From NCBI GenBank assembly GCA_053919585.1, contig JBSSHM010000097.1: a stretch of DNA of 64,000 nt; one strand, written 5' to 3'. Each line of letters opens with the position of its first letter. The stretch's first letter is position 1. The stretch is from Euprymna scolopes (taxonomy: Eukaryota). Below are positions 28,019 to 40,003 of this stretch, piece by piece. A model generated the notes under the pieces. That model had not been told where the DNA came from. It did no database searches and saw only the letters and a program-made list of their open reading frames with translations. A program made the translations under genes and the position numbers.

Positions 28019-29599
28019 TTAAGGAAAGACCATGCGGAAACCCAAATCGGGATTATGATAGTTTGGTGAGACGGCAGCAGATTGCGTGACTTGAGTGGCT
28101 TCTTTCGGGAGCGTGAAACTGCCACCTTTAATGATTACATGAAAGCGATTGCCGTAGTGTGAGACGGAAGATGTCCATTCTGCAACATTACCACTTAATC
28201 CCAATACCCCATGTAAAGAATCATCATCAGATAAGTCTGCATTGCGAGCATGGTTGTCACTACCTGGGTGATTTCTATCAATGCTGCGACCAATCTCATA
28301 TTCATTTCCCCATGGGTGCAGAGTTGAGCGAGCTCCAGCAATTTTTTTCCATTCTTGATCCGTTGGTAGGCGTCCGCCTGCCCAATTGCTAAAAGCCCAT
28401 GCACTCCACCAAGTGATGTCGGTGATAGGCTTTTTAGGGGTTTTCTGTTGTTGTTGCCAATTTTTTGGGCGATGTGTAATTTCTGATGGATGTTTGGGAT
28501 GATCAAAGAAGTGCAGTTTGGTGAGTGGGTCTTGTAAGAAAGCTTGATATTGCTTAACACTGATTTCAGTTCTGCTAATACGAATCTCTAGGGGTATTTG
28601 TTTGATGGGTAATGATGAAAGGCTTGGGTACTGTTCAGGGGTTAAGTATTGTAGCATTTTAACAATAATTGAGGAGGGAGGAGTGCCAATAGGATAGAAT
28701 CCTGATGGGATAGATTGTAGTTTGGTAGTTGATTTCCAAGGGGTTTGGCGTGCGATATTGGGTAAATTAGCGGGTCTTGGATAGACACAACGAAATCCAG
28801 AGTATTGTGAGCGATAATCAAAAGGCGCTGGTCTTTGGATAAGATTTAAGGCGTGTATATTAAGTGGGCGATTGTAAGCATTTCCTCCCATGAGTACGGC
28901 TTTGCCATTTTTTTTTGTTGCCCATTCTAATAAGTTATTGCCTAAGTCTTGTACGTGTGTTTCAGTAGTAGGTAATTTTGCTTTGCCACAAGCTTGCACA
29001 TTCAGTGTTGGATCTCTAAATGGCATGGCTCTGCGAATAATTTTTTTATCTGTATGATTGCCCCATGGGTAAATATTTCCTTTTTTTCCATTGGCTATCG
29101 CTTCAAATTCATAGTCATAGGGGAGTCTGCCACCTGCTGCTTGGCAATAGCTATGTGCTTCAAAATAACTTACCCCACTGACTGGCATGTTTAAGCGTCC
29201 CAGGAGTTTGTGTCCGGCTGTTTTACTTTGATATATCCAATTATCAGGCTGGGAAGGATGAGCGATATTGGGTCGATTTTCTTGGGTAGCGAGCCACTGG
29301 CGAAACTTTCCAAAATCTTTTTGCGTGACTTCGCATTCATCTATCCATAGAGCAGGCAGTTTGGTAAGTGAGGATGGGCGAGTAAAAAACTGGACTAATT
29401 TAGGCTTATTTTGTAAATGTTGAAGACTGCTTTGTAAAACTTTATCTAGTGGACTGAGGTCGGTTTGTTCTTGGATGTTAATGTCTACCGTATCAATATG
29501 AATATTGGCAATAAAAAACCATCGCCATGTCATAAAAGCAATGATACTTAGGCAGAATAAGATTAGTACAAGGGTGGTTGTATTACGTAGCTTTAACAA
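28019..29599 (-). CDS. Membrane-anchored protein with two FGE/SUMF1-like domains
   Basis: Two sets of PV..VS/IT W/Y..A, GGRLP, PWGN, GN..EW and GFR motifs; N-terminal TM. Confidence 0.88.
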   Translation of the reverse strand: MLKLRNTTTLVLILFCLSIIAFMTWRWFFIANIHIDTVDINIQEQTDLSPLDKVLQSSLQHLQNKPKLVQFFTRPSSLTKLPALWIDECEVTQKDFGKFRQWLATQENRPNIAHPSQPDNWIYQSKTAGHKLLGRLNMPVSGVSYFEAHSYCQAAGGRLPYDYEFEAIANGKKGNIYPWGNHTDKKIIRRAMPFRDPTLNVQACGKAKLPTTETHVQDLGNNLLEWATKKNGKAVLMGGNAYNRPLNIHALNLIQRPAPFDYRSQYSGFRCVYPRPANLPNIARQTPWKSTTKLQSIPSGFYPIGTPPSSIIVKMLQYLTPEQYPSLSSLPIKQIPLEIRISRTEISVKQYQAFLQDPLTKLHFFDHPKHPSEITHRPKNWQQQQKTPKKPITDITWWSAWAFSNWAGGRLPTDQEWKKIAGARSTLHPWGNEYEIGRSIDRNHPGSDNHARNADLSDDDSLHGVLGLSGNVAEWTSSVSHYGNRFHVIIKGGSFTLPKEATQVTQSAAVSPNYHNPDLGFRMVFP

Positions 29600-30281
29600 A
29601 GGCTTTGCTCAGATTTAGGAGGTAGGGTGGTATGAAGTCCATCAATGTGTTCTTGTAAATCTGGTTTGATAGTTGAACGCATGGGATCTAAAATAAATTC
29701 TATACCCTCTCTACGAGCTAATTTCGCAACAGGAACAAAGTCACTATCTCCGGAAATCAGTATAATTTTATTGACTAATTTTTTGTATGTCATGGAGGCA
29801 ATATCAAGACCAATTTTCATGTCCACACTTTTTTGTTGAGCATAATATACGACATCAGATTCTGTGAGAGAAGATGTGTGTAATTTTCCAGCAATAAATT
29901 TTTTTCTTTATGAGGGTCTTTGATTTTCCAACGAGCATGTCTTTCATCAAGAGATCCTAACCTTAATGCTACATTTCTTGTTTTTCTTAATTGATTGTGA
30001 AAATTCAGGCGAAATATAGCGGTTTTTGATTGGCTAAAATCAATGAGATTATTGCTGATAGGATGATGTATTTTTTTTTGTATAGGTGGGCAATCGTAGA
30101 AAAATATTCGGTAGAGTCTTTCATCCTCCCCTTTATTTTGTTGATGTTGTTTGCTTTGAATATGCTTTAAGCAATGATCCGTTAAGTTTCTAGCAACTAG
30201 CTCTGGGTTGGTTTGCTGAAAAAATCTACGATGTTTCTTTAAATAGAAATCCCCATCAACTAGAATAGCTACATTTCGCAT
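29593..30281 (-). CDS. NYN-domain (PIN-like, LabA/DUF88) ribonuclease, frameshift at the T7 run 29899-29905
   Basis: AILVDGDF, RIFFYDCPP, QKSVDMKIGLDIAS, SGDSDFVP; adding one A joins the two ORFs. Confidence 0.9.
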
Positions 30282-30301
30282 CGTACATTGTTATTTTGGA
30301 T

Positions 30302-30374
30302 AAAAAAAATCCAAAGGATCGGCGAAACACCTATTTATTAATATGTGATTAGCTTACTGCTTTGGATTGTGTAT
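30302..30374 (-). ncRNA. Candidate structured leader or small RNA upstream of the NYN gene
   Basis: 9-bp closing stem AATCCAAAG/CTTTGGATT (30368-30360 with 30316-30308), inner CAC-A-TATT/AATA-G-GTG helix, followed by a U-tract. Confidence 0.55.
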
Positions 30375-30380
30375 AAGATT

Positions 30381-30410
30381 ATTTTACAATAAATGATTAT
30401 TGTTTGTAAA
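30381..30410 (-). promoter_or_regulatory. Sigma70-like promoter for the leader RNA and NYN gene
   Basis: TTTACA-N18-TAAAAT. Confidence 0.5.
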
Positions 30411-30413
30411 TAA

Positions 30414-32285
30414 TCAAGAGGTGTTTTTTTGTGATGTGAAATTTTCTATGCTATGCTTAGGTGATGATTTCTTGCGAAGCATCAGAGAGAGACTTAGCCC
30501 TGCAATAATCAGTAAAAAGAGTAGAATGCCAATGCTGGTATAGAGGATGGTGGCAATGTTTTTGGCTTGATGATTCTCTTGTAATTTAGGTTCGGGGATG
30601 AGTGTTTTGTTCACTTGTGTGCCAAGGGTTTGGGCATCAAGTAGGAGTTTATTATTTGAAAATGCGGCATTGACAAAGCCGATGGAGGCATCTTCTAACC
30701 AAGGGTCAACGATGATGATTGGACGCCATTGCATAGCAGGATAGTTGGTTTCATTAGGGTGAACAATAAGTAGATGACCGGGAGGAAAGTCAAGCCGTTG
30801 TCCTTTGTATAGTCCCGGGAAGGAGCGTAGGACTAGGCTTATTTGAGCATTGTTTGTGCTAATGTTTTCGCTCCATAGGGAATCGCTTTGGTTAATGAGT
30901 AAGGTACTGGTAACATTTACGTGATTGGCACTGAGCTGGAGTTTGTTAGGGGCCTCAGTAAAAATTTTTGTGATTGGTGCAGGTTGGGTGGGTTTATTAA
31001 TAAAATATCTTTTGAGTTCGTTATCTAAACTGGTGATGAGTTTATTGTTGGGATGGTGGTTAATCATCTCTGGATTTCTGGCATAGCGATTTAGGATTTC
31101 TTTTATGCCCTTTATAAAGGTGGTTTTCTGTGCTCGAGCAAGCTGTAGCTGATCAAGAAAGAAGGCGAGTAATACTCGATTATAGTCTTGTTCATCAAGG
31201 GTAATTTGATGAGGAGGTTGTTGAGAGCCTTGTTTGGGTTGTCCATGATCTTTGGAATTGGGGACATGCATTTTTAGAGAGCGTCTGCCCTGTTGTCCGG
31301 ATTGCCCTTGATTTTGTTGTCCGTTGGGTTGATTGGATTGTCCAGAATTGGATTGTTGTGAGTTGCTGTTTTTATCTCCTAGTAAGTCAATGAGGGATTC
31401 AAACATGGAATCAAGGCTTCTTTGGTTATTACCTTGTTTTCCTTGTGAGTTTTGTTGATTAGCTGGTGAGGAATTATTTGTTTGTTCGCCTTGTTTCCCG
31501 TCTTCACTGTTTCCGGAATTCTCACTAGGCGGTAGGAGGCTATCATGTTGGAGTTCTTGTAAGGTTTGTAAATCAGCAAGTTGCGTATTATCCAATGATG
31601 AAGAGCCATTTTGTTGCGATTGTTCGTTACCATCTTGAGCATTTGCAGAATCATTATCAGAAAATTTATCTCCTTCACCAAGTTGTTCTTGTTCTTTGCC
31701 AGCGGCACCATGCTTACCATCAGCTAAAGCTTGTTCTGGAGAAATTAGTGGTTTAACATCTTCGCCAAGGTAGTGCCAGTGTCGAGGAGAGATGTCGTGT
31801 TCTTTTAATATACCAATGGCAAGATAATAGAGACTAACATCGTAAACATCAATACGTATGTTTAATTTTTCTTGAGGGTTGAAGGTTTTAATAAGTTGAT
31901 CAAAAGGGTTATTGGGTTTGAGCAGTTCTTTACGATAAAAACGCAGCCCCGTGTTGTATTCACGGATGTAGTTTTGTCTGAGTTCAACAATGGGGTAGAG
32001 AGAGGGGTCGCAGTCATGTGGGATGGCACAACTATTGTAGTCATGCAGGAGTGCTGGTGGACTGGAGGGGAGATCATTGTATACGACAGTTGTGGCGATT
32101 TGACGGGCAAGTATTGTAGTAATATCGGCATTTTTCTCTAGTTCAAGATCAGCTTTTTCTTGTTGGACAGATAAGGTAACAACAATTAAAATGAGAATGA
32201 CGGCAACGCTGTTGGCAAGAATATCTGCTAAGGCAACTCCACCTTGTCCCCATAGCGATATTTTTTTATTTCTCAGCTGACTCAT
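30414..32285 (-). CDS. Uncharacterised protein with MotB/ExbD-like N-terminal TM (ALADIL), Q/N/S/G-rich linker and C-terminal TM
   Basis: Asp in the N-terminal TM; low-complexity centre; hydrophobic tail followed by RKK. Confidence 0.7.
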   Translation of the reverse strand: MSQLRNKKISLWGQGGVALADILANSVAVILILIVVTLSVQQEKADLELEKNADITTILARQIATTVVYNDLPSSPPALLHDYNSCAIPHDCDPSLYPIVELRQNYIREYNTGLRFYRKELLKPNNPFDQLIKTFNPQEKLNIRIDVYDVSLYYLAIGILKEHDISPRHWHYLGEDVKPLISPEQALADGKHGAAGKEQEQLGEGDKFSDNDSANAQDGNEQSQQNGSSSLDNTQLADLQTLQELQHDSLLPPSENSGNSEDGKQGEQTNNSSPANQQNSQGKQGNNQRSLDSMFESLIDLLGDKNSNSQQSNSGQSNQPNGQQNQGQSGQQGRRSLKMHVPNSKDHGQPKQGSQQPPHQITLDEQDYNRVLLAFFLDQLQLARAQKTTFIKGIKEILNRYARNPEMINHHPNNKLITSLDNELKRYFINKPTQPAPITKIFTEAPNKLQLSANHVNVTSTLLINQSDSLWSENISTNNAQISLVLRSFPGLYKGQRLDFPPGHLLIVHPNETNYPAMQWRPIIIVDPWLEDASIGFVNAAFSNNKLLLDAQTLGTQVNKTLIPEPKLQENHQAKNIATILYTSIGILLFLLIIAGLSLSLMLRKKSSPKHSIENFTSQKNTS

Positions 32286-32294
32286 GGGTAATAA

Positions 32295-32828
32295 TTATCG
32301 GCTTTTGCTTAATGCACGTTTGATTCGTACCGGTAGATCTTCGAGTTTAACGGTGTTTAACAAATCGCTGTTTGCAATAATCCAACCAATGCTGATGCGT
32401 TTATTAGGATTGGAGGTTAACATGCAGTTGCGTGCAATTGCCATGGTTTTTACGCCACCTTCTAAAATGGCAAAAATAATTTGTTGTTTATGGTTGTTGT
32501 AGATTTTATTAATATAGTTAAGAAAATCTCCACCTGAGGTACATATATCTGCTCGTTTAATACTTTGGTTGGTTTCTAAAATGCGTAATTTATCTGGATA
32601 AGAGATAACGACAAGACCTTCCCCTCCATTTGTCCAGCTTACTTTGAACTCAGCATTTTCAGTTGAGCGTTCAAGCATGGCTTGGATATCTTCAGAGATA
32701 ACTAGGTTTATGAGTGCATAGAGAATAATTAATAGTGCTAATGTGCCACCAAATATTTCCACCATGGGGGCATCAATAACATTATCAATTTGATTTTTTC
32801 TGCGGTTTCTTCGTGAAAACCTATACAT
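32295..32828 (-). CDS. Bitopic ExbD/TolR-like protein
   Basis: Basic N-terminus, then APMVEIFGGTLALLIIL TM with an acidic residue; overlaps the stop of the MotA/TolQ gene. Confidence 0.6.
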   Translation of the reverse strand: MYRFSRRNRRKNQIDNVIDAPMVEIFGGTLALLIILYALINLVISEDIQAMLERSTENAEFKVSWTNGGEGLVVISYPDKLRILETNQSIKRADICTSGGDFLNYINKIYNNHKQQIIFAILEGGVKTMAIARNCMLTSNPNKRISIGWIIANSDLLNTVKLEDLPVRIKRALSKSR

Positions 32829-33885
32829 TTGAGTGAGTTATTTCGTGAGTGGTTGGTGCATTGATGGAAACAGGATTTTGCTCAAATTGTGAGAGTAATT
32901 TTTCTTCCCATCGGGCAATAAGTGTTTGTAAGAGGGTAAGGGTGACAGAAAGAGTCAGGGCAATGAGTGTTGTATCAAAAGCAATGCCAAGTGGAGAAAG
33001 TGCTTCAGAGAGTAGCTGACTATAATTTGATTCTGAGGTGGCAAGTAAGTCAGAGAGTCCTTCTGTAGCAAGAGAAATTCCAAGTACGGTGCCAATAAAA
33101 CCGAGAATGGGAATTGCCCAGTTGATGTATTTTGGTATGGCATAAAAGCTATCGAGTTGTTGCCAGCATAGTTCAATGAGTTTATTTTTGTTGTTTGATG
33201 TTTTGCTGGATTGATAAAGTTTCGCTAAGGCTTGAGCACGATTTTTTACCATGTAGAGATAAATAGTGATAAGCTTGCCAAGAATTAAAATAAGTCCCCA
33301 AAAAAACAATAGTAAGGTTAGGGGTGGAATAATGCCTCGGGTAAGAAATTTTGTAGCAATAATTTTTAGTACACCAGTATCTATGTTGTACATAATGATG
33401 AGCAGGGCATTCACAATAATGATTCCGATAATGAGACTGATAATCAGTGATGGACCTTGAAAAATACGCTGGACTTTTTCACTCACTGATAACTCATCTT
33501 CTGTTTTATTGAAGCGTATGAGATGCATTTGTAGTGTACTGGCAAGCAGCAGGCTAAAAAGTAGGGTGAGTAGATGGTTAACCAATGTAATGGATTCACC
33601 TTGTAGGATATCTTGCCATAAGTTTGCTGAAGTTCCACTAATAACAATTAGCAGGGTACTTAAGGTACTCCAATAGCTTATATTAATTGCACCTGGGGTT
33701 CTGAGTGCAAGCACACTGGGGATGCTGAGAAGAATGATAATTGTCCAGCCAAATAACAGCATGGCTCCCATATCTGCCATTTTGTATTGTTGGATGAAGA
33801 AGTAAAAGCAGATTAGGGGAATAATAGCATTGAGTAACAGTACGGTTTTTGAAAGTCCGTTGGGTTTGTTTGATGTAGATGACAT
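32821..33885 (-). CDS. MotA/TolQ/ExbB proton-channel family protein with extra N-terminal TMs
   Basis: AIPILGFIGTVLGI and LGIAFDTTLIAL helices. Confidence 0.9.
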   Translation of the reverse strand: MSSTSNKPNGLSKTVLLLNAIIPLICFYFFIQQYKMADMGAMLLFGWTIIILLSIPSVLALRTPGAINISYWSTLSTLLIVISGTSANLWQDILQGESITLVNHLLTLLFSLLLASTLQMHLIRFNKTEDELSVSEKVQRIFQGPSLIISLIIGIIIVNALLIIMYNIDTGVLKIIATKFLTRGIIPPLTLLLFFWGLILILGKLITIYLYMVKNRAQALAKLYQSSKTSNNKNKLIELCWQQLDSFYAIPKYINWAIPILGFIGTVLGISLATEGLSDLLATSESNYSQLLSEALSPLGIAFDTTLIALTLSVTLTLLQTLIARWEEKLLSQFEQNPVSINAPTTHEITHSNV

Positions 33886-33952
33886 AGTGATTGAATTGAT
33901 TGGTTATAAGTAATTTAGTTAGTAAGATACAAAAGTAGCAATGATTGATAGG

Positions 33953-34492
33953 TTATAGATTGACAGGAATACTAAATGACCCATCTCTTCTTATTTTTGG
34001 AATAGTGTTTAATAAATTTTGTAGTTCATGGTCATCTTTTTTAACGGTTACTTTACCAATTATTCGTGAAGGTTTTTTAGAGAAATCACCAATAGCTTTA
34101 ATGGATAAAGCAGCTTGGTTATCTTGTAATTGAAAGATTATGCCATTTAAGTCAACACCAACATAGGAAAAATAATTGCCTAATTTTTTTCCAGCGACTT
34201 GCACTTGATTTAGCTCAATTTTATAAACAATTTTGAGAGACAGAAGGCGCTTGTATTCAAGCGACCAATTGATGTGAGGGACATAGGCAATAATAGGGAT
34301 ATTAGGTTTAGTGGCAATGCTACTATGACCTTTCCAAATCGTTCCTGCTGGGAGTTTGACTTGGATGGGAAGATTGATTATTTCTGGTTTAATAAATTGT
34401 TTATATACCCAGCTTGCAGGGAGATTGACAATCATAAAAATGATAAAAAATAGAATAAATAGGAGAGAGCTAAGAATGATTTTTTTAATCAT
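33953..34492 (-). CDS. gspN: Short type II secretion GspN-like protein
   Basis: TM plus NLPASWV and GTIWKG; follows gspL and gspM. Confidence 0.7.
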   Translation of the reverse strand: MIKKIILSSLLFILFFIIFMIVNLPASWVYKQFIKPEIINLPIQVKLPAGTIWKGHSSIATKPNIPIIAYVPHINWSLEYKRLLSLKIVYKIELNQVQVAGKKLGNYFSYVGVDLNGIIFQLQDNQAALSIKAIGDFSKKPSRIIGKVTVKKDDHELQNLLNTIPKIRRDGSFSIPVNL

Positions 34493-34537
34493 TTGTATAG
34501 GGTGTCTTATTAGTGGTTATTTGTCTCAATCCATCCA

Positions 34538-35065
34538 TTATTTAAATGGGGAGTTGGCTCTTTGCTTGTCATGTGTAGTTGCTAAGGTAAGTTTAGCATC
34601 TACCTTTCCTGATGTTTTGGTAGCATTCATATTAACACTTCTAAAGACGACTTGATAATCAAAATTTAATTGACTCACCCAATCAATTAATTTTTTGTAA
34701 GGAACGTTTTCAAACGTGACAATGGTTTCTTTACGTTGGTTTTGAAAAATTCTTTTTTTCCATGGGTTGAGAGAGAGTTCTTCTAGGGTTTGTTCAACAA
34801 CACTTGGCAGATTGTTGGTACTCCAGTCAAATGTTTTAGTGGTGTCAGAAAGCAAGACACTTTGCTGGTTAAACCACTGGGTAAAACGTTGCTCATTAGT
34901 TAATTGGCTTTTGAGTTTTTTATTAGAGAGAGATATAGGTTCCCATATAGCAAGATAAAAAATAAAAATAATAATCATTGGTAGGCCGATGATTATCATG
35001 ATCTGTTCACGTGGTTCACGTGTTTCATAAAATTCAATTAAGGGTTGTATGAGATCTCGAATCAT
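34538..35065 (-). CDS. gspM: Type II secretion protein M
   Basis: PREQ, TM, IWEPI, coiled coil, ENVPYKKLIDWV. Confidence 0.85.
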   Translation of the reverse strand: MIRDLIQPLIEFYETREPREQIMIIIGLPMIIIFIFYLAIWEPISLSNKKLKSQLTNEQRFTQWFNQQSVLLSDTTKTFDWSTNNLPSVVEQTLEELSLNPWKKRIFQNQRKETIVTFENVPYKKLIDWVSQLNFDYQVVFRSVNMNATKTSGKVDAKLTLATTHDKQRANSPFK

Positions 35066-35089
35066 AGTTAACTAAGTTTCATACTATTT

Positions 35090-36136
35090 CTATGTAATTT
35101 TCTTTATGCTAATAGTTGATTTTGCCTTACCATCACTATCACCAAGCGATTGGACATTAATATCCAATGTTTTATTTTCTTTAAGTTTATTGATAAAGTC
35201 TTGAATGCCGGCGACTGAATTTGATTTTACATAAATTCGTAATGCGTAATTATTGTAGTTGACTTGTGTGAGGTTGATTTTTTTGCTGTTGTCTAAGGCG
35301 GTGATAACGGCTTCTGTTAAACCAATAAAATTCACACTGTAAAATTGCTTTTGTTGATTGATTTTGCGAAATTTTTGTTCAGCTTGTGTACGTAGATTGA
35401 CAATACGTTTTTCCTCAGGAAATAAACCTTTAAATTTTTGAATATTTGCTTGTCTAGTTTTATTTATAGAGGACTCAATTTGTTGGTTTTCTAGGTAATA
35501 ATAAGCACTGAGGCTTAACCAGAGCACGCCCCCCCATGCGGCAACTTTTAGCCATGGTTGTAATAGGGTTTTGTAGGGAGTGCTTTTATTGTATTCATTT
35601 TGTAATAGATTAATTATTGAGGAACTAATGTTGATGTCGCTTTCTAATAATTCGCCATAATTTTCAGCTATAAATGGTGCTGGAATGTCTTCCTCTGGGA
35701 GTAGATTGGCGACGTCTTCTATAATATTGGGGTGTATGGCTACGGGAAGTTTATCTGGAGAATTGATCAGGCATTGATCAGGTTCAATAAGAAAGTTACT
35801 TTCTTCAGGAAGGACAAGGACATCTGGGATAAATTTTTTCGGGTTGATTCCGTGCTCAATGCATAAATCAAGCCATTGTCGTATTTTTTCATGTGAGCAT
35901 ACGACCACAAACCATTGCTCGCCAGATCTCTGCACAGCATAGTGTAAATCAGAGATGTCTTGTGCGAGTTCTTCTTCTAAGCTAAAGGCAATAATGCGTT
36001 GACATTGTGCAATGCTTTTGGCAGGTAAAGAAAGCTTGAAGAAAGATAGGTGTATAGACGGAATGAGGATAGTATGACCAATAAAGTCATCACTCATTAC
36101 AAGTTCGTGGTTAGGGGTAATTCTTGCAACATCCAT
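35090..36136 (-). CDS. gspL: Type II secretion protein L
   Basis: FSLEEELAQDISDLHYA, IPDVLVLP, INLLQ, FP...RIVNLRTQ. Confidence 0.88.
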   Translation of the reverse strand: MDVARITPNHELVMSDDFIGHTILIPSIHLSFFKLSLPAKSIAQCQRIIAFSLEEELAQDISDLHYAVQRSGEQWFVVVCSHEKIRQWLDLCIEHGINPKKFIPDVLVLPEESNFLIEPDQCLINSPDKLPVAIHPNIIEDVANLLPEEDIPAPFIAENYGELLESDINISSSIINLLQNEYNKSTPYKTLLQPWLKVAAWGGVLWLSLSAYYYLENQQIESSINKTRQANIQKFKGLFPEEKRIVNLRTQAEQKFRKINQQKQFYSVNFIGLTEAVITALDNSKKINLTQVNYNNYALRIYVKSNSVAGIQDFINKLKENKTLDINVQSLGDSDGKAKSTISIKKIT

Positions 36137-39928: not shown

Positions 39929-40003
39929 TGGGCTGTCGCCAAGTGGTAAGGCAACGGGTTTTGATCCCGTCATTCGCAGGTTCGAATCCTGCCAGCCCAG
40001 CCA
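39929..40003 (+). tRNA. tRNA-Gln(TTG) with encoded CCA
   Basis: Acceptor tgggctg/cagccca, anticodon arm acggg-tt-TTG-at-cccgt, T-loop gttcgaatc. Confidence 0.98.

What the first reader, a model, noticed from the sequence alone, without database searches (positions are those of the whole stretch)
29593..30410. NYN ribonuclease with its own promoter and a structured, U-tailed leader RNA: candidate RNA-antitoxin module
Seen on the minus strand: TTTACA-N18-TAAAAT, then AATCCAAAG CAGTAAGCTAAT CAC A TATT aata AATA G GTG TTTCGCCGATC CTTTGGATT TTTTTT, ending ~20 nt before the NYN ATG. This is a 9-bp closing stem around a large internal loop and apical helix, far bigger than an ordinary terminator loop. 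The NYN acidic catalytic motifs (VDG, VD, GDSDF) are intact. The cassette sits inside an otherwise tightly packed envelope operon, like an insertion. Established: type III TA systems (ToxIN, AbiQ) and AbiF use a promoter, small RNA, terminator, RNase layout. Inference: the ~70-nt RNA is made in excess and binds or regulates the NYN nuclease, giving an abortive-infection or addiction module with a PIN-like toxin.
Basis: partly seen in the sequence, partly recalled or inferred. Interest (0 to 1): 0.8.

Follow-up and report, generated by a model that had tools for sequence, protein, structure and literature searches.

The report
Conserved hairpin RNA guarding NYN nuclease
The hairpin in front of this broken NYN nuclease gene is a real structured RNA that sits in front of the same nuclease in many bacterial phyla, prophages and plasmids, so the two form a mobile RNA-plus-nuclease unit that has not been described and probably works like an RNA-controlled toxin or phage-exclusion gene.

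Summary
The promoter-like site, the 61-nt hairpin with its U-tail, and the NYN gene (split by a one-base shift in an A7 run) are all where stated.

- **Conservation:** The same promoter, hairpin, U-tract and NYN layout recurs upstream of this NYN subfamily in about 68 of 80 species-representative genomes, 79 of 80 viral contigs, and both plasmid loci tested.
- **Structure:** Every base pair covaries. The internal loop (CAGUAM / CRANC) is nearly invariant and resembles a sarcin-ricin loop.
- **Partners:** No protein partner is conserved.
- **Closest known RNA:** Rfam TEG147, an orphan 60-nt S. aureus sRNA, is the Staphylococcus member. There it sits beside a decayed NYN gene.
- **Origin in the window:** The cassette is an ~820-bp low-GC insertion between two operon genes that are adjacent in relatives.
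- **Prophage position:** It lies next to the repressor gene, in the position rexAB holds in lambda.

The mechanism is inferred, not shown. The hairpin probably terminates most transcripts, giving excess small RNA, and the NYN protein binds that RNA. This resembles a type III toxin-antitoxin or exclusion module, but it is not a member of the known type III families. A purely autoregulatory leader is the main rival.

The parts
30381..30410 (-). Sigma-70-type promoter-like site: TTTACA (30410-30405), 18-nt spacer, TAAAAT (30386-30381). It starts 4 nt after the stop codon of the upstream 623-aa gene.
   Evidence: 10 of 12 matches. The same position is occupied by TTGACA/TATAAT-like boxes in relatives. 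In 36 of the 56 loci whose best promoter match scores at least 8 of 12, the -10 box ends 9-15 nt before the stem.
30308..30368 (-). Hairpin RNA: 9-bp closing stem (30368-30360 with 30316-30308), conserved asymmetric internal loop, inner helix and apical loop.
   Evidence: fold. Models R1 and R2 match 30294-30379 at 76.7 and 60.1 bits. Covariation is shown.
30354..30359 (-). 5' strand of the internal loop, CAGUAA. The family consensus is C-A-G-U-A-(A/C).
   Evidence: Column counts over 76 sequences: C 67, A 61, G 68, U 74, A 75, then A 38 / C 33.
30317..30321 (-). 3' strand of the internal loop, CGAUC. The family consensus is C-(G/A)-A-N-C. Together with AGUA this fits the sarcin-ricin / loop E (bulged-G) sequence pattern.
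   Evidence: Column counts: C 70, G 59 / A 14, A 76 of 76, N, C 65. JAR3D scores the equivalent loop of Rfam TEG147 as sarcin-ricin (PMC13085918).
30302..30309 (-). T8 run. Its first two bases pair in the stem and six follow it, giving the U-tail of an intrinsic-terminator-like element.
   Evidence: In 76 family members the 8 nt after the stem hold at least 4 T in all and at least 6 T in 57.
29817..30281 (-). NYN gene, N-terminal piece (154 aa up to an out-of-frame stop). It aligns with residues 1-~125 of intact 225-aa homologues.
29899..29905 (-). A7 homopolymer where the reading frame shifts by one base. Intact relatives L082, L084 and L001 have A8 in the same context.
29593..29901 (-). NYN gene, C-terminal piece in the other frame. 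It carries the VDM and GDSDF motifs.
   Evidence: Pfam NYN at 40.3 bits against a cutoff of 24.2. Alignment.
29586..30413 (-). Approximate extent of the inserted cassette (promoter, RNA and NYN, nothing else).
   Evidence: Relatives L102 and L103 have the two flanking genes adjacent. There is a GC dip. Model R2 finds no motif in L102 or L103.
30414..32285 (-). Upstream flanking gene (623 aa, no Pfam family). It belongs to the envelope/T2SS-linked operon and is not part of the module.
28019..29599 (-). Downstream flanking gene (FGE-sulfatase domain, 526 aa). Its mechanical TTG start overlaps the NYN stop, and the original start region seen in relatives is displaced by the insertion.

Best explanation
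The window holds a decayed copy of a mobile two-part module. A promoter fires about 5 nt upstream of a 55-60-nt hairpin. The base of that hairpin, together with the following U-run, forms an intrinsic terminator. The NYN (PIN-like) endonuclease gene starts 5-30 nt further on.

Proposed mechanism:
1. Most transcripts stop at the hairpin and give an abundant small RNA.
2. A minority read through and encode the nuclease.
3. The near-invariant sarcin-ricin-like internal loop is the recognition site of the NYN protein.
4. Excess RNA therefore holds the nuclease in check, acting as an antitoxin, an autoregulatory operator, or both. This parallels type III toxin-antitoxin loci.
5. On prophages (next to the repressor gene), conjugative plasmids and defence islands, the module would serve exclusion, abortive infection or addiction. 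The nuclease is released when transcription of the labile RNA stops.

Shown here: the module, its conservation, the RNA structure, its mobility, and its position in phages. Inferred: termination ratio, RNA-protein binding, toxicity and biological role. In this window the nuclease is frameshifted, so only the RNA half can still work.
For: **The RNA is real and acts as RNA**
- All 16 pairs covary. 93% of cells are paired, against 68% in shuffles and 53-56% when partners are slid.
- An independent MAFFT alignment of 12 close copies gives 100% pairing in the closing stem, with 5 of 9 pairs compensated.
- G-U pairs outnumber A-C by 64 to 11, which fits the sense strand only.
- Single-sequence folds of distant members give the same architecture.

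**Strict linkage to NYN**
- All 4 pattern hits in metagenome contigs lie directly upstream of NYN genes.
- Model hits lie directly upstream of NYN in 66 of 80 genome loci, plus 2 more by eye.
- The same holds in 79 of 80 viral loci and 2 of 2 plasmid loci.
- About 1.3 Mb of flanking DNA holds no other strong hit. The exceptions are a copy split from its gene by two IS transposases and second copies upstream of an integrase.

**No protein partner**
- 488 neighbouring ORFs fall into 425 clusters.

**Own promoter and U-tract are conserved**.

**A discrete small transcript exists**
- Rfam TEG147 matches at its gathering score in L096, directly upstream of an intact NYN gene.
- Model R2, built without Staphylococcus sequences, finds the TEG147 loci.
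- Teg147 is listed as an independently transcribed ~60-nt sRNA seen in at least two studies (PMC5826253).

**Mobile and defence context**
- Neighbours include integrase, methyltransferase/HNH, GmrSD and HicAB genes.
- 168 plasmid records carry the gene, 129 of them conjugative.
- At least 345 viral contigs carry it.
- In prophages the order is HTH repressor, NYN, integrase.
- In lambdoid phage ev099 the order is CI, NYN, N. From knowledge of the lambda map, that is the rexAB position.

**The nuclease decays while the RNA persists**
- This is seen in the window, L005, L034, L014, L058, L061 and the S. aureus-type loci.

**The catalytic acidic residues are at least 90% conserved**.
Against: - No experiment shows binding, toxicity or defence.
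- 12-14 of 80 genome loci lack the motif (the Rhodanobacteraceae clade and H. pylori). NYN can therefore exist without this RNA.
- The E. coli phage clade keeps the hairpin and U-tract but not the sarcin-ricin-like loop.
- The protein is unusually conserved for a toxin: 45-70% identity across phyla, and only 143 clusters at 50% identity with E <= 1e-30.
- A second hairpin copy upstream of an integrase hints at a gene-regulatory role instead.
- There are no tandem repeats as in known type III antitoxins.
- PADLOC gives only domain-level hits.
- Some broken copies may be assembly errors in MAGs.
Confidence: 0.45

Rival explanations
1. The hairpin is a purely cis-acting autoregulatory leader. NYN is a non-toxic RNA-processing enzyme of mobile elements. 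It binds or cleaves the hairpin at the 5' end of its own mRNA, and in some elements that of the integrase mRNA, to set expression. The terminator only keeps expression low, and the short RNA is a by-product.
For: - The hairpin sits 5-30 nt from the start codon, in some loci only 4-9 nt, where it could also affect translation initiation.
- A second copy lies right before an integrase gene in L036 and L114.
- Very high protein conservation is atypical of toxins.
- Some clades have NYN without the motif.
- Precedent from knowledge: RNase E and RNase III regulate their own mRNAs through leader hairpins.
Against: - No alternative (antiterminator) structure is possible, because the transcript starts at the hairpin. 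The design therefore always makes mostly short RNA.
- The RNA is retained and transcribed where NYN has decayed.
- The position in the lysogeny module and in defence islands fits an exclusion gene better.
Confidence: 0.3
2. The conserved loop is bound by a universal host component (a ribosomal protein, a translation factor or Hfq) and not by NYN. The hairpin is then a generic stabiliser or terminator cassette that travels with the gene.
For: - Sarcin-ricin / loop E motifs are common protein-binding sites in rRNA (knowledge).
- A hairpin plus U-tail is the usual Hfq-binding end of sRNAs (knowledge).
- A similar hairpin forms the 3' end of the S. aureus sRNA SprC, with no NYN gene nearby.
Against: - The motif is almost never found away from NYN across about 1.3 Mb searched on both strands.
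- A generic element should occur in front of many kinds of genes.
- Model R2 does not detect the SprC hairpin.
Confidence: 0.1
3. The short RNA is a trans-acting base-pairing sRNA that regulates host or phage mRNAs.
For: It is an independent small transcript in S. aureus. The related-looking SprC acts by base pairing (PMC4627067 abstract).
Against: Both stems covary freely, and the only conserved single-stranded bases are the structured internal loop and an AUA in the apical loop. There is no conserved seed that could serve across more than ten phyla.
Confidence: 0.05
4. The hairpin is only the terminator of the upstream 623-aa gene, or a chance structure.
For: It lies 46 nt downstream of that gene's stop and ends in a T-run. 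The single-sequence z-score is modest.
Against: - Relatives with the same two flanking genes lack both the hairpin and NYN.
- The hairpin follows NYN into unrelated neighbourhoods.
- A promoter lies between the upstream stop codon and the hairpin.
Confidence: 0.02

Closest known systems
Rfam RF03535 TEG147 (S. aureus small RNA Teg147 / srn_0960)
   Same: - Same architecture: an 8-9-bp closing stem, an AGUA / GAA-type internal loop, an inner helix and a U-tail, about 60 nt in all.
- TEG147 matches at its gathering score directly upstream of an intact NYN gene in L096.
- My model, built without Staphylococcus sequences, finds the TEG147 loci at 29.6-36.5 bits.
- TEG147 gives a sub-threshold hit on the Lachnospiraceae copy (33 bits).
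   Different: - The window's RNA is not detected by the Rfam model, even at E <= 10.
- The Rfam family is described only as an S. aureus RNA of unknown function.
- In S. aureus-type loci the NYN gene is reduced to about 45 nt of wreckage, so the link to NYN was not visible there.
- No paper in the searched library links the two.
Type III toxin-antitoxin systems (ToxIN, AbiQ/AntiQ, CptIN, TenpIN)
   Same: - One promoter, then the RNA gene, an intrinsic terminator and an endoribonuclease gene.
- No protein antitoxin.
- Carried by plasmids and prophages.
- In known systems the terminator is thought to set the RNA:toxin ratio (established knowledge of ToxIN).
   Different: - A single hairpin instead of tandem repeats processed by the toxin.
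- The hairpin is itself the terminator.
- The toxin has the NYN/PIN-like fold, not the ToxN fold.
- Binding and toxicity are untested.
VapC20/VapC26 of M. tuberculosis (PIN-domain toxins that cleave the 23S rRNA sarcin-ricin loop)
   Same: A PIN-like nuclease paired with a sarcin-ricin-type RNA structure (cited in PMC5499597).
   Different: Those are type II systems with protein antitoxins. The loop is their target in rRNA, not a cis-encoded RNA. No evidence here shows that NYN cleaves rRNA.
Lambda rexA-rexB (lysogen-expressed exclusion genes)
   Same: Same genomic slot. In phage ev099 the NYN gene lies between the CI-type repressor and N, on the same strand. In Gram-positive prophages it lies between an HTH repressor and the integrase.
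   Different: The proteins are unrelated, no RNA component is known for Rex, and the function of NYN is untested.
LabA-like NYN proteins (Pfam PF01936; PDB 2qip VPA0982; MARF1 NYN domain)
   Same: Same catalytic fold and acidic residues.
   Different: This subfamily is about 225 aa and has an inserted beta-subdomain (TM-score normalised to the query only 0.44-0.48). It also has extra near-invariant Cys/His and Trp residues. Bacterial PF01936 members have no studied function (PMC5499597).

Membership tests
NYN domain (Pfam PF01936, PIN-like superfamily) | Match to the family HMM above the gathering score | tested here: met
   C piece 40.3 bits against 24.2. Intact homologue P0002 47.1 bits.
NYN domain (Pfam PF01936, PIN-like superfamily) | Conserved acidic active-site residues | tested here: met
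   D9, D64, D154, D179 and D181 (P0002 numbering) are at least 90% conserved in 62 sequences. The window keeps VDG, YDC, VDM and GDSDF.
NYN domain (Pfam PF01936, PIN-like superfamily) | NYN/PIN-like fold | tested here: met
   AlphaFold2 model of P0002 has pLDDT 92.8. Top Foldseek PDB hits are 2qip and MARF1 NYN, probability 1.00.
NYN domain (Pfam PF01936, PIN-like superfamily) | Intact open reading frame in this window | tested here: not met
   One-base frame shift in the A7 run at 29899-29905.
Type III toxin-antitoxin systems | RNA gene directly upstream of an endoribonuclease gene, under one promoter, with no protein antitoxin | tested here: met
Type III toxin-antitoxin systems | Intrinsic terminator between the RNA and the toxin gene | tested here: met
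   The stem is followed by a U-run in all 76 copies. Termination in vivo is known only from the ~60-nt Teg147 transcript.
Type III toxin-antitoxin systems | Antitoxin made of tandem direct repeats processed by the toxin | tested here: not met
   No tandem repeat in 29400-30700. There is a single hairpin in every locus.
Type III toxin-antitoxin systems | Toxin of the ToxN/AbiQ, CptN or TenpN families | tested here: not met
   The only Pfam family matched is NYN, and the fold is NYN.
Type III toxin-antitoxin systems | The RNA binds and neutralises a growth-inhibiting protein | not testable with these tools
   Needs expression, binding and rescue experiments.
Rfam RF03535 TEG147 | Score at or above the gathering score (56.1 bits) | tested here: not met
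   The window gives no hit at E <= 10. L062 scores 33.1 bits. L096, L089 and L093 score 81-90 bits.
Rfam RF03535 TEG147 | Same secondary structure, internal loop type and U-tail; mutual detection by independent models | tested here: met
Sarcin-ricin / loop E (bulged-G) motif | 5'-AGUA-3' opposite 5'-GA(A/N)-3' inside a helix | tested here: met
   The window has CAGUAA / CGAUC, and the columns are near invariant. JAR3D accepts 100% of TEG147 sequences for this motif (PMC13085918). The three-dimensional geometry was not tested.
Intrinsic (Rho-independent) terminator | Stable stem immediately followed by a U-run | tested here: inconclusive
   There is a 9-bp stem with 3 G-C pairs followed by U6. 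The consensus scan did not list it because the enclosed region exceeds its loop limit. The window's hairpin is the weakest of those folded, at -14.8 against -19.6 to -26.3 kcal/mol.
Catalogued anti-phage defence systems (PADLOC-DB 2.0) | Significant full-length match to a system protein model | tested here: not met
   There are only short domain-level matches: PDLC01154 NYN at E 1e-4 to 2e-4, and HEC-09 at 5e-4 to 2e-3.

The most novel reading that the evidence does not exclude
[quoted passage not shown] The leader hairpin is a molecular mimic of that loop (consensus YAGUA / GANC on both). It acts as a decoy antitoxin made in excess by self-termination. This would be a fourth type III TA family. 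It would be the first with a PIN-like toxin and a single-hairpin, target-mimic antitoxin. It would occupy the rex slot of temperate phages across many phyla, and it would explain the orphan S. aureus sRNA Teg147 as a leftover antitoxin.
Probability: 0.15. Interest if true: 0.9.

Novelty: new variant of a known kind. Interest (0 to 1): 0.8.

Why it matters
- **A new RNA-protein partnership.** A structured RNA and a nuclease of unknown function travel together on prophages, conjugative plasmids and genomic islands in more than ten phyla. Neither has an assigned role. Bacterial PF01936 NYN proteins are described as unstudied (PMC5499597), and Teg147 is an orphan sRNA.
- **A testable function for both.** The link gives each a concrete hypothesis. 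It enlarges a one-genus Rfam family into a cross-phylum family. It also points to a candidate exclusion or addiction gene at the repressor-adjacent slot of temperate phages.
- **A possible extension of type III TA systems.** If the RNA is an antitoxin, type III systems would extend to PIN-like toxins and to non-repeat antitoxins.
- **Tractable hosts.** Homologues occur in E. coli lambdoid phages, Pseudomonas, Campylobacter pTet plasmids and Staphylococcus, so experiments are straightforward.

Tried and rejected
- **Rfam on the window.** The gathering search found only a tRNA. The permissive search of 29500-30600 found only a chance snoR71 hit.
- **PDB sequence search** with the family profile found nothing meaningful.
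- **NCBIfam** gave only a far sub-threshold TIGR00288 hit. **PADLOC** gave domain-level hits only.
- **Exact pattern scan of viral contigs** with the close-clade motif gave 0 hits. The protein-based scan was needed instead.
- **Hairpin as terminator of the upstream gene:** rejected.
- **DNA-level inverted repeat or recombination site:** rejected, because G-U pairs outnumber A-C by 64 to 11 on the sense strand.
- **Tandem-repeat antitoxin:** none.
- **Conserved protein partner:** none in genome loci.
- **SprC as a family member:** the hairpin looks alike, but R2 does not detect it, so I leave it as a resemblance.
- **The 12 loci with no recognisable motif** (H. pylori and the Rhodanobacteraceae clade, out of 14 that R2 missed). 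I inspected them by eye and found other upstream structures, but not this motif.
- **Literature searches** for NYN together with type III TA, sarcin-ricin, prophage/abortive infection, or structured-RNA surveys found no prior description.
- **Organism of the window.** I did not identify it beyond relatives among uncultured Gammaproteobacteria.
Full report
**What is in the window**

All features lie on the minus strand.
- The 623-aa gene ends at 30414.
- A promoter-like site follows: TTTACA-N18-TAAAAT at 30410..30381.
- Next comes a hairpin at 30368..30308. Its 9-bp closing stem encloses an asymmetric internal loop (CAGUAA opposite CGAUC), an imperfect inner helix and an apical loop.
- A T8 run sits at 30309..30302.
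- The NYN gene starts with ATG at 30281.

The NYN gene is in two frames.
- The N piece (154 aa) and the C piece (Pfam NYN, E 6e-10) align end to end with intact ~225-aa homologues.
- The frames change in an A7 run at 29905..29899. Intact relatives with the same local sequence have A8 there.
- The acidic motifs are present.

On its own the hairpin is unimpressive, with z -2.5 to -3.5. Promoter-like sites are no more frequent than in shuffles. No tandem repeats are present. Rfam finds nothing here.

**The cassette is an insertion**

- The nearest relatives of the 623-aa protein are 63-70% identical.
- In L102 and L103 they lie directly upstream of the FGE-sulfatase gene, 27 and 72 nt apart. Neither locus has NYN or the hairpin.
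- In the window the two genes are about 815 nt apart, and that stretch is 32-35% GC against 40-44% in the flanks.
- The insert holds the promoter, the RNA and NYN, and nothing else. Its right end displaces the start region of the FGE-sulfatase gene.

**The hairpin travels with NYN**

Among close homologues, alignment of the 200 nt upstream showed the same -35/-10 boxes, hairpin and T-run in unrelated neighbourhoods. The neighbours include an integrase, methyltransferase/HNH genes, GmrSD and HicAB. The closing stem carries compensatory changes.

An exact-pattern scan of metagenome contigs gave four hits. All four lie about 25 nt upstream of an NYN start codon.

I then built covariance models.
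- A model from 12 close copies (R1) found the element just upstream of NYN in distant phyla.
- A second model from 50 copies (R2) gave these results:

| Loci searched | Loci with a hit upstream of NYN |
|---|---|
| Species-representative genome loci | 66 of 80 (plus 2 more by eye) |
| Viral-contig loci | 79 of 80 |
| Campylobacter pTet and Thermus plasmid loci | 2 of 2 |

About 1.3 Mb was searched on both strands. The only strong hits away from an NYN start were two kinds of exception.
- In L004, two DDE transposase genes separate the RNA from its NYN gene.
- In L036 and L114, a second copy lies immediately upstream of an integrase gene.

**The structure is supported by covariation**

- On the 50-sequence alignment all 16 pairs show double changes. 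93% of cells pair, against 68% in shuffles and 53-56% with slid partners. That alignment is fitted to the model.
- The independent MAFFT alignment of 12 copies gives 100% pairing in the closing stem, with 5 of 9 pairs compensated.
- Single-sequence folds of six divergent members give the same architecture.
- G-U pairs outnumber A-C by 64 to 11. The structure therefore acts as RNA of the NYN-sense strand, not as DNA.
- The stems vary freely, but the internal loop is nearly fixed at C-A-G-U-A-(A/C) opposite C-(G/A)-A-N-C. This is the sequence pattern of the sarcin-ricin / loop E motif.

**Promoter, terminator and partners**

- In 56 of 76 loci the best sigma-70-type promoter match scores at least 8 of 12. 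In 36 of those 56 the -10 box ends 9-15 nt before the stem, so the transcript should start a few bases before the hairpin.
- The 8 nt after the stem hold at least 4 T in all 76 copies and at least 6 T in 57.
- The start codon follows within about 5-30 nt.
- No protein-coding neighbour is conserved in genome loci: 488 ORFs fall into 425 clusters.

**Link to a known RNA**

- Rfam RF03535 TEG147 gave a sub-threshold hit on the Lachnospiraceae copy, with the same architecture.
- A pattern taken from that consensus found Staphylococcus-type loci in viral contigs.
- In L096, TEG147 matches at its gathering score and lies directly upstream of an intact NYN gene.
- In L089, L090, L093 and L098, the RNA is followed by the ribosome-binding site and about 45 nt of broken NYN start. 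Unrelated DNA follows.
- R2 contains no Staphylococcus sequence, yet it detects these loci.
- Teg147 is listed as an independently transcribed ~60-nt sRNA seen in at least two expression studies (PMC5826253). It lies on a genomic island (PMC3053349).
- Its internal loop is scored as sarcin-ricin by JAR3D (PMC13085918).

Its connection to NYN seems to have gone unnoticed because the S. aureus gene has decayed.

**The protein**

- The subfamily is compact and highly conserved, at 45-70% identity across phyla. It forms 143 clusters at 50% identity with E <= 1e-30.
- The AlphaFold2 model of P0002 is confident (pLDDT 92.8). It matches NYN structures 2qip and MARF1, but the query-normalised TM-score is only 0.44-0.48, which implies an inserted beta-subdomain.
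- The catalytic aspartates, several Cys/His residues and a Trp are near invariant.
- No defence-system model matches beyond the domain level.

**Where the module lives**

- It occurs on 168 plasmid records. 136 are Campylobacter, and 129 records are typed conjugative.
- At least 345 viral contigs carry it.
- Cultured temperate phages carry it too, including Streptococcus, Lactococcus, Moraxella, Burkholderia and E. coli lambdoid phages.
- In viral contigs the usual order on one strand is HTH repressor, NYN, integrase.
- In phage ev099 the order is CI-type repressor, NYN, N. From knowledge of the lambda map, that is the slot of rexAB.
- The E. coli clade is more distant, at 40% identity. It keeps the promoter, a long hairpin and a U-run, but not the sarcin-ricin-like loop.

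**Mechanism**

The design always places a terminator hairpin between the promoter and the nuclease gene. No upstream sequence is available to form an antiterminator. The simplest reading is therefore a fixed excess of short RNA over nuclease mRNA.

Termination does not need the invariant loop. That loop is best explained as a binding site for the co-transferred NYN protein. This gives an RNA-restrained nuclease, which works like a type III TA. The lysogeny-module, plasmid and defence-island locations suggest exclusion or addiction.

Several loci have a broken nuclease gene with an intact RNA: the window, L005, L034, L014, L058, L061 and S. aureus. This fits toxin-first decay, though MAG errors could contribute.

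Evidence against this reading:
- 12-14 genome loci lack the motif.
- The protein is unusually conserved for a toxin.
- The hairpin copy upstream of an integrase fits a regulatory nuclease.

I put the TA-like reading at 0.45 and a purely autoregulatory leader at 0.30. Neither is shown.

**Membership**

- The protein is an NYN-domain protein.
- The module is not a member of the ToxIN, CptIN or TenpIN families, because it has no repeats and a different fold.
- The window's RNA fails the Rfam TEG147 threshold. It is nevertheless linked to that family by shared architecture, by the shared downstream gene, and by my model detecting the TEG147 loci.
- I found no publication describing the RNA-NYN association. 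Subscription-only literature was not searchable.

Noticed in passing
L036:5927-6003 and L114:3927-4003: A second copy of the hairpin (43.6 bits) lies downstream of NYN and immediately upstream of a tyrosine integrase gene, inside an element that also has XRE-HTH and ImmA-like genes. This suggests the hairpin may also control integrase expression.
   Followed up: partly
L091:5737-5886 and L099:482-631: The 3' terminator hairpin of the S. aureus sRNA SprC (Rfam RF02890) has the same closing stem and the same GAGUAG / CGAAA internal loop as TEG147. No NYN gene follows it, and my model R2 does not detect it.
   Followed up: partly
L184:3420-4358 (Escherichia phage ev099) and L185 (Stx2a-converting phage): E. 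coli lambdoid and Stx2a-converting phages carry a longer NYN homologue (285 aa as annotated in ev099) between the CI-type repressor and N. It is preceded by a promoter, a long hairpin and a U-run that lack the sarcin-ricin-like loop. The DNA matches in 275 of 5426 complete E. coli genomes, but at 80% or more of its length in only 74.
   Followed up: partly
L004:2542-4995: Two DDE transposase genes are inserted between the hairpin RNA and its NYN gene. An SNF2 helicase gene lies upstream, as on the Campylobacter pTet and Thermus plasmids.
   Followed up: yes
L014, L058 and L061 (NYN coding regions): These NYN genes have in-frame stop codons while the RNA motif is intact. In L014 and L058 the stops fall at adjacent codons of the same conserved ...ELRKxRKVAL... 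stretch.
   Followed up: no
L043, L051, L053, L056, L070-L072, L074 (Rhodanobacteraceae clade): The NYN genes of this clade lack the motif. Most loci share a TAAAAT box followed by a short GC-rich hairpin with a CUAUGG loop and no U-run. This may be a reduced or alternative partner RNA.
   Followed up: no
L100 (C. jejuni pTet-M129) and (Burkholderia phage phiE202 gp9 'Cpp15'): The family is the 'Cpp15' / mis-annotated 'helicase' gene of Campylobacter tetracycline-resistance conjugative plasmids (136 plasmid records). It sits between a very large SNF2-related gene and the relaxase region. The hairpin variant there lacks a clear U-run and is followed by a second hairpin.
   Followed up: partly
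window 28019-29599: The insertion displaces the start region of the FGE-sulfatase-domain gene. The only in-frame start that precedes its conserved N-terminal hydrophobic segment is a TTG overlapping the NYN stop codon.
   Followed up: partly
window 32821-36136: The upstream operon encodes T2SS L and M proteins, a weak T2SS N-like match and a weak MotA/ExbB-like match.
   Followed up: partly
window 30294-30379: The window's hairpin is the weakest of those folded (-14.8 kcal/mol). It has a 6-nt insertion and mismatches in the inner helix, and no clear Shine-Dalgarno sequence precedes the NYN ATG. The RNA half may be starting to decay too.
   Followed up: no
L034:4990-5010 compared with L045: Another homopolymer frameshift: L034 has A6 right after the NYN ATG where L045 has A7.
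   Followed up: no
window 39929-40003: tRNA-Gln (UUG), the only Rfam or ARAGORN hit in the window.
   Followed up: no
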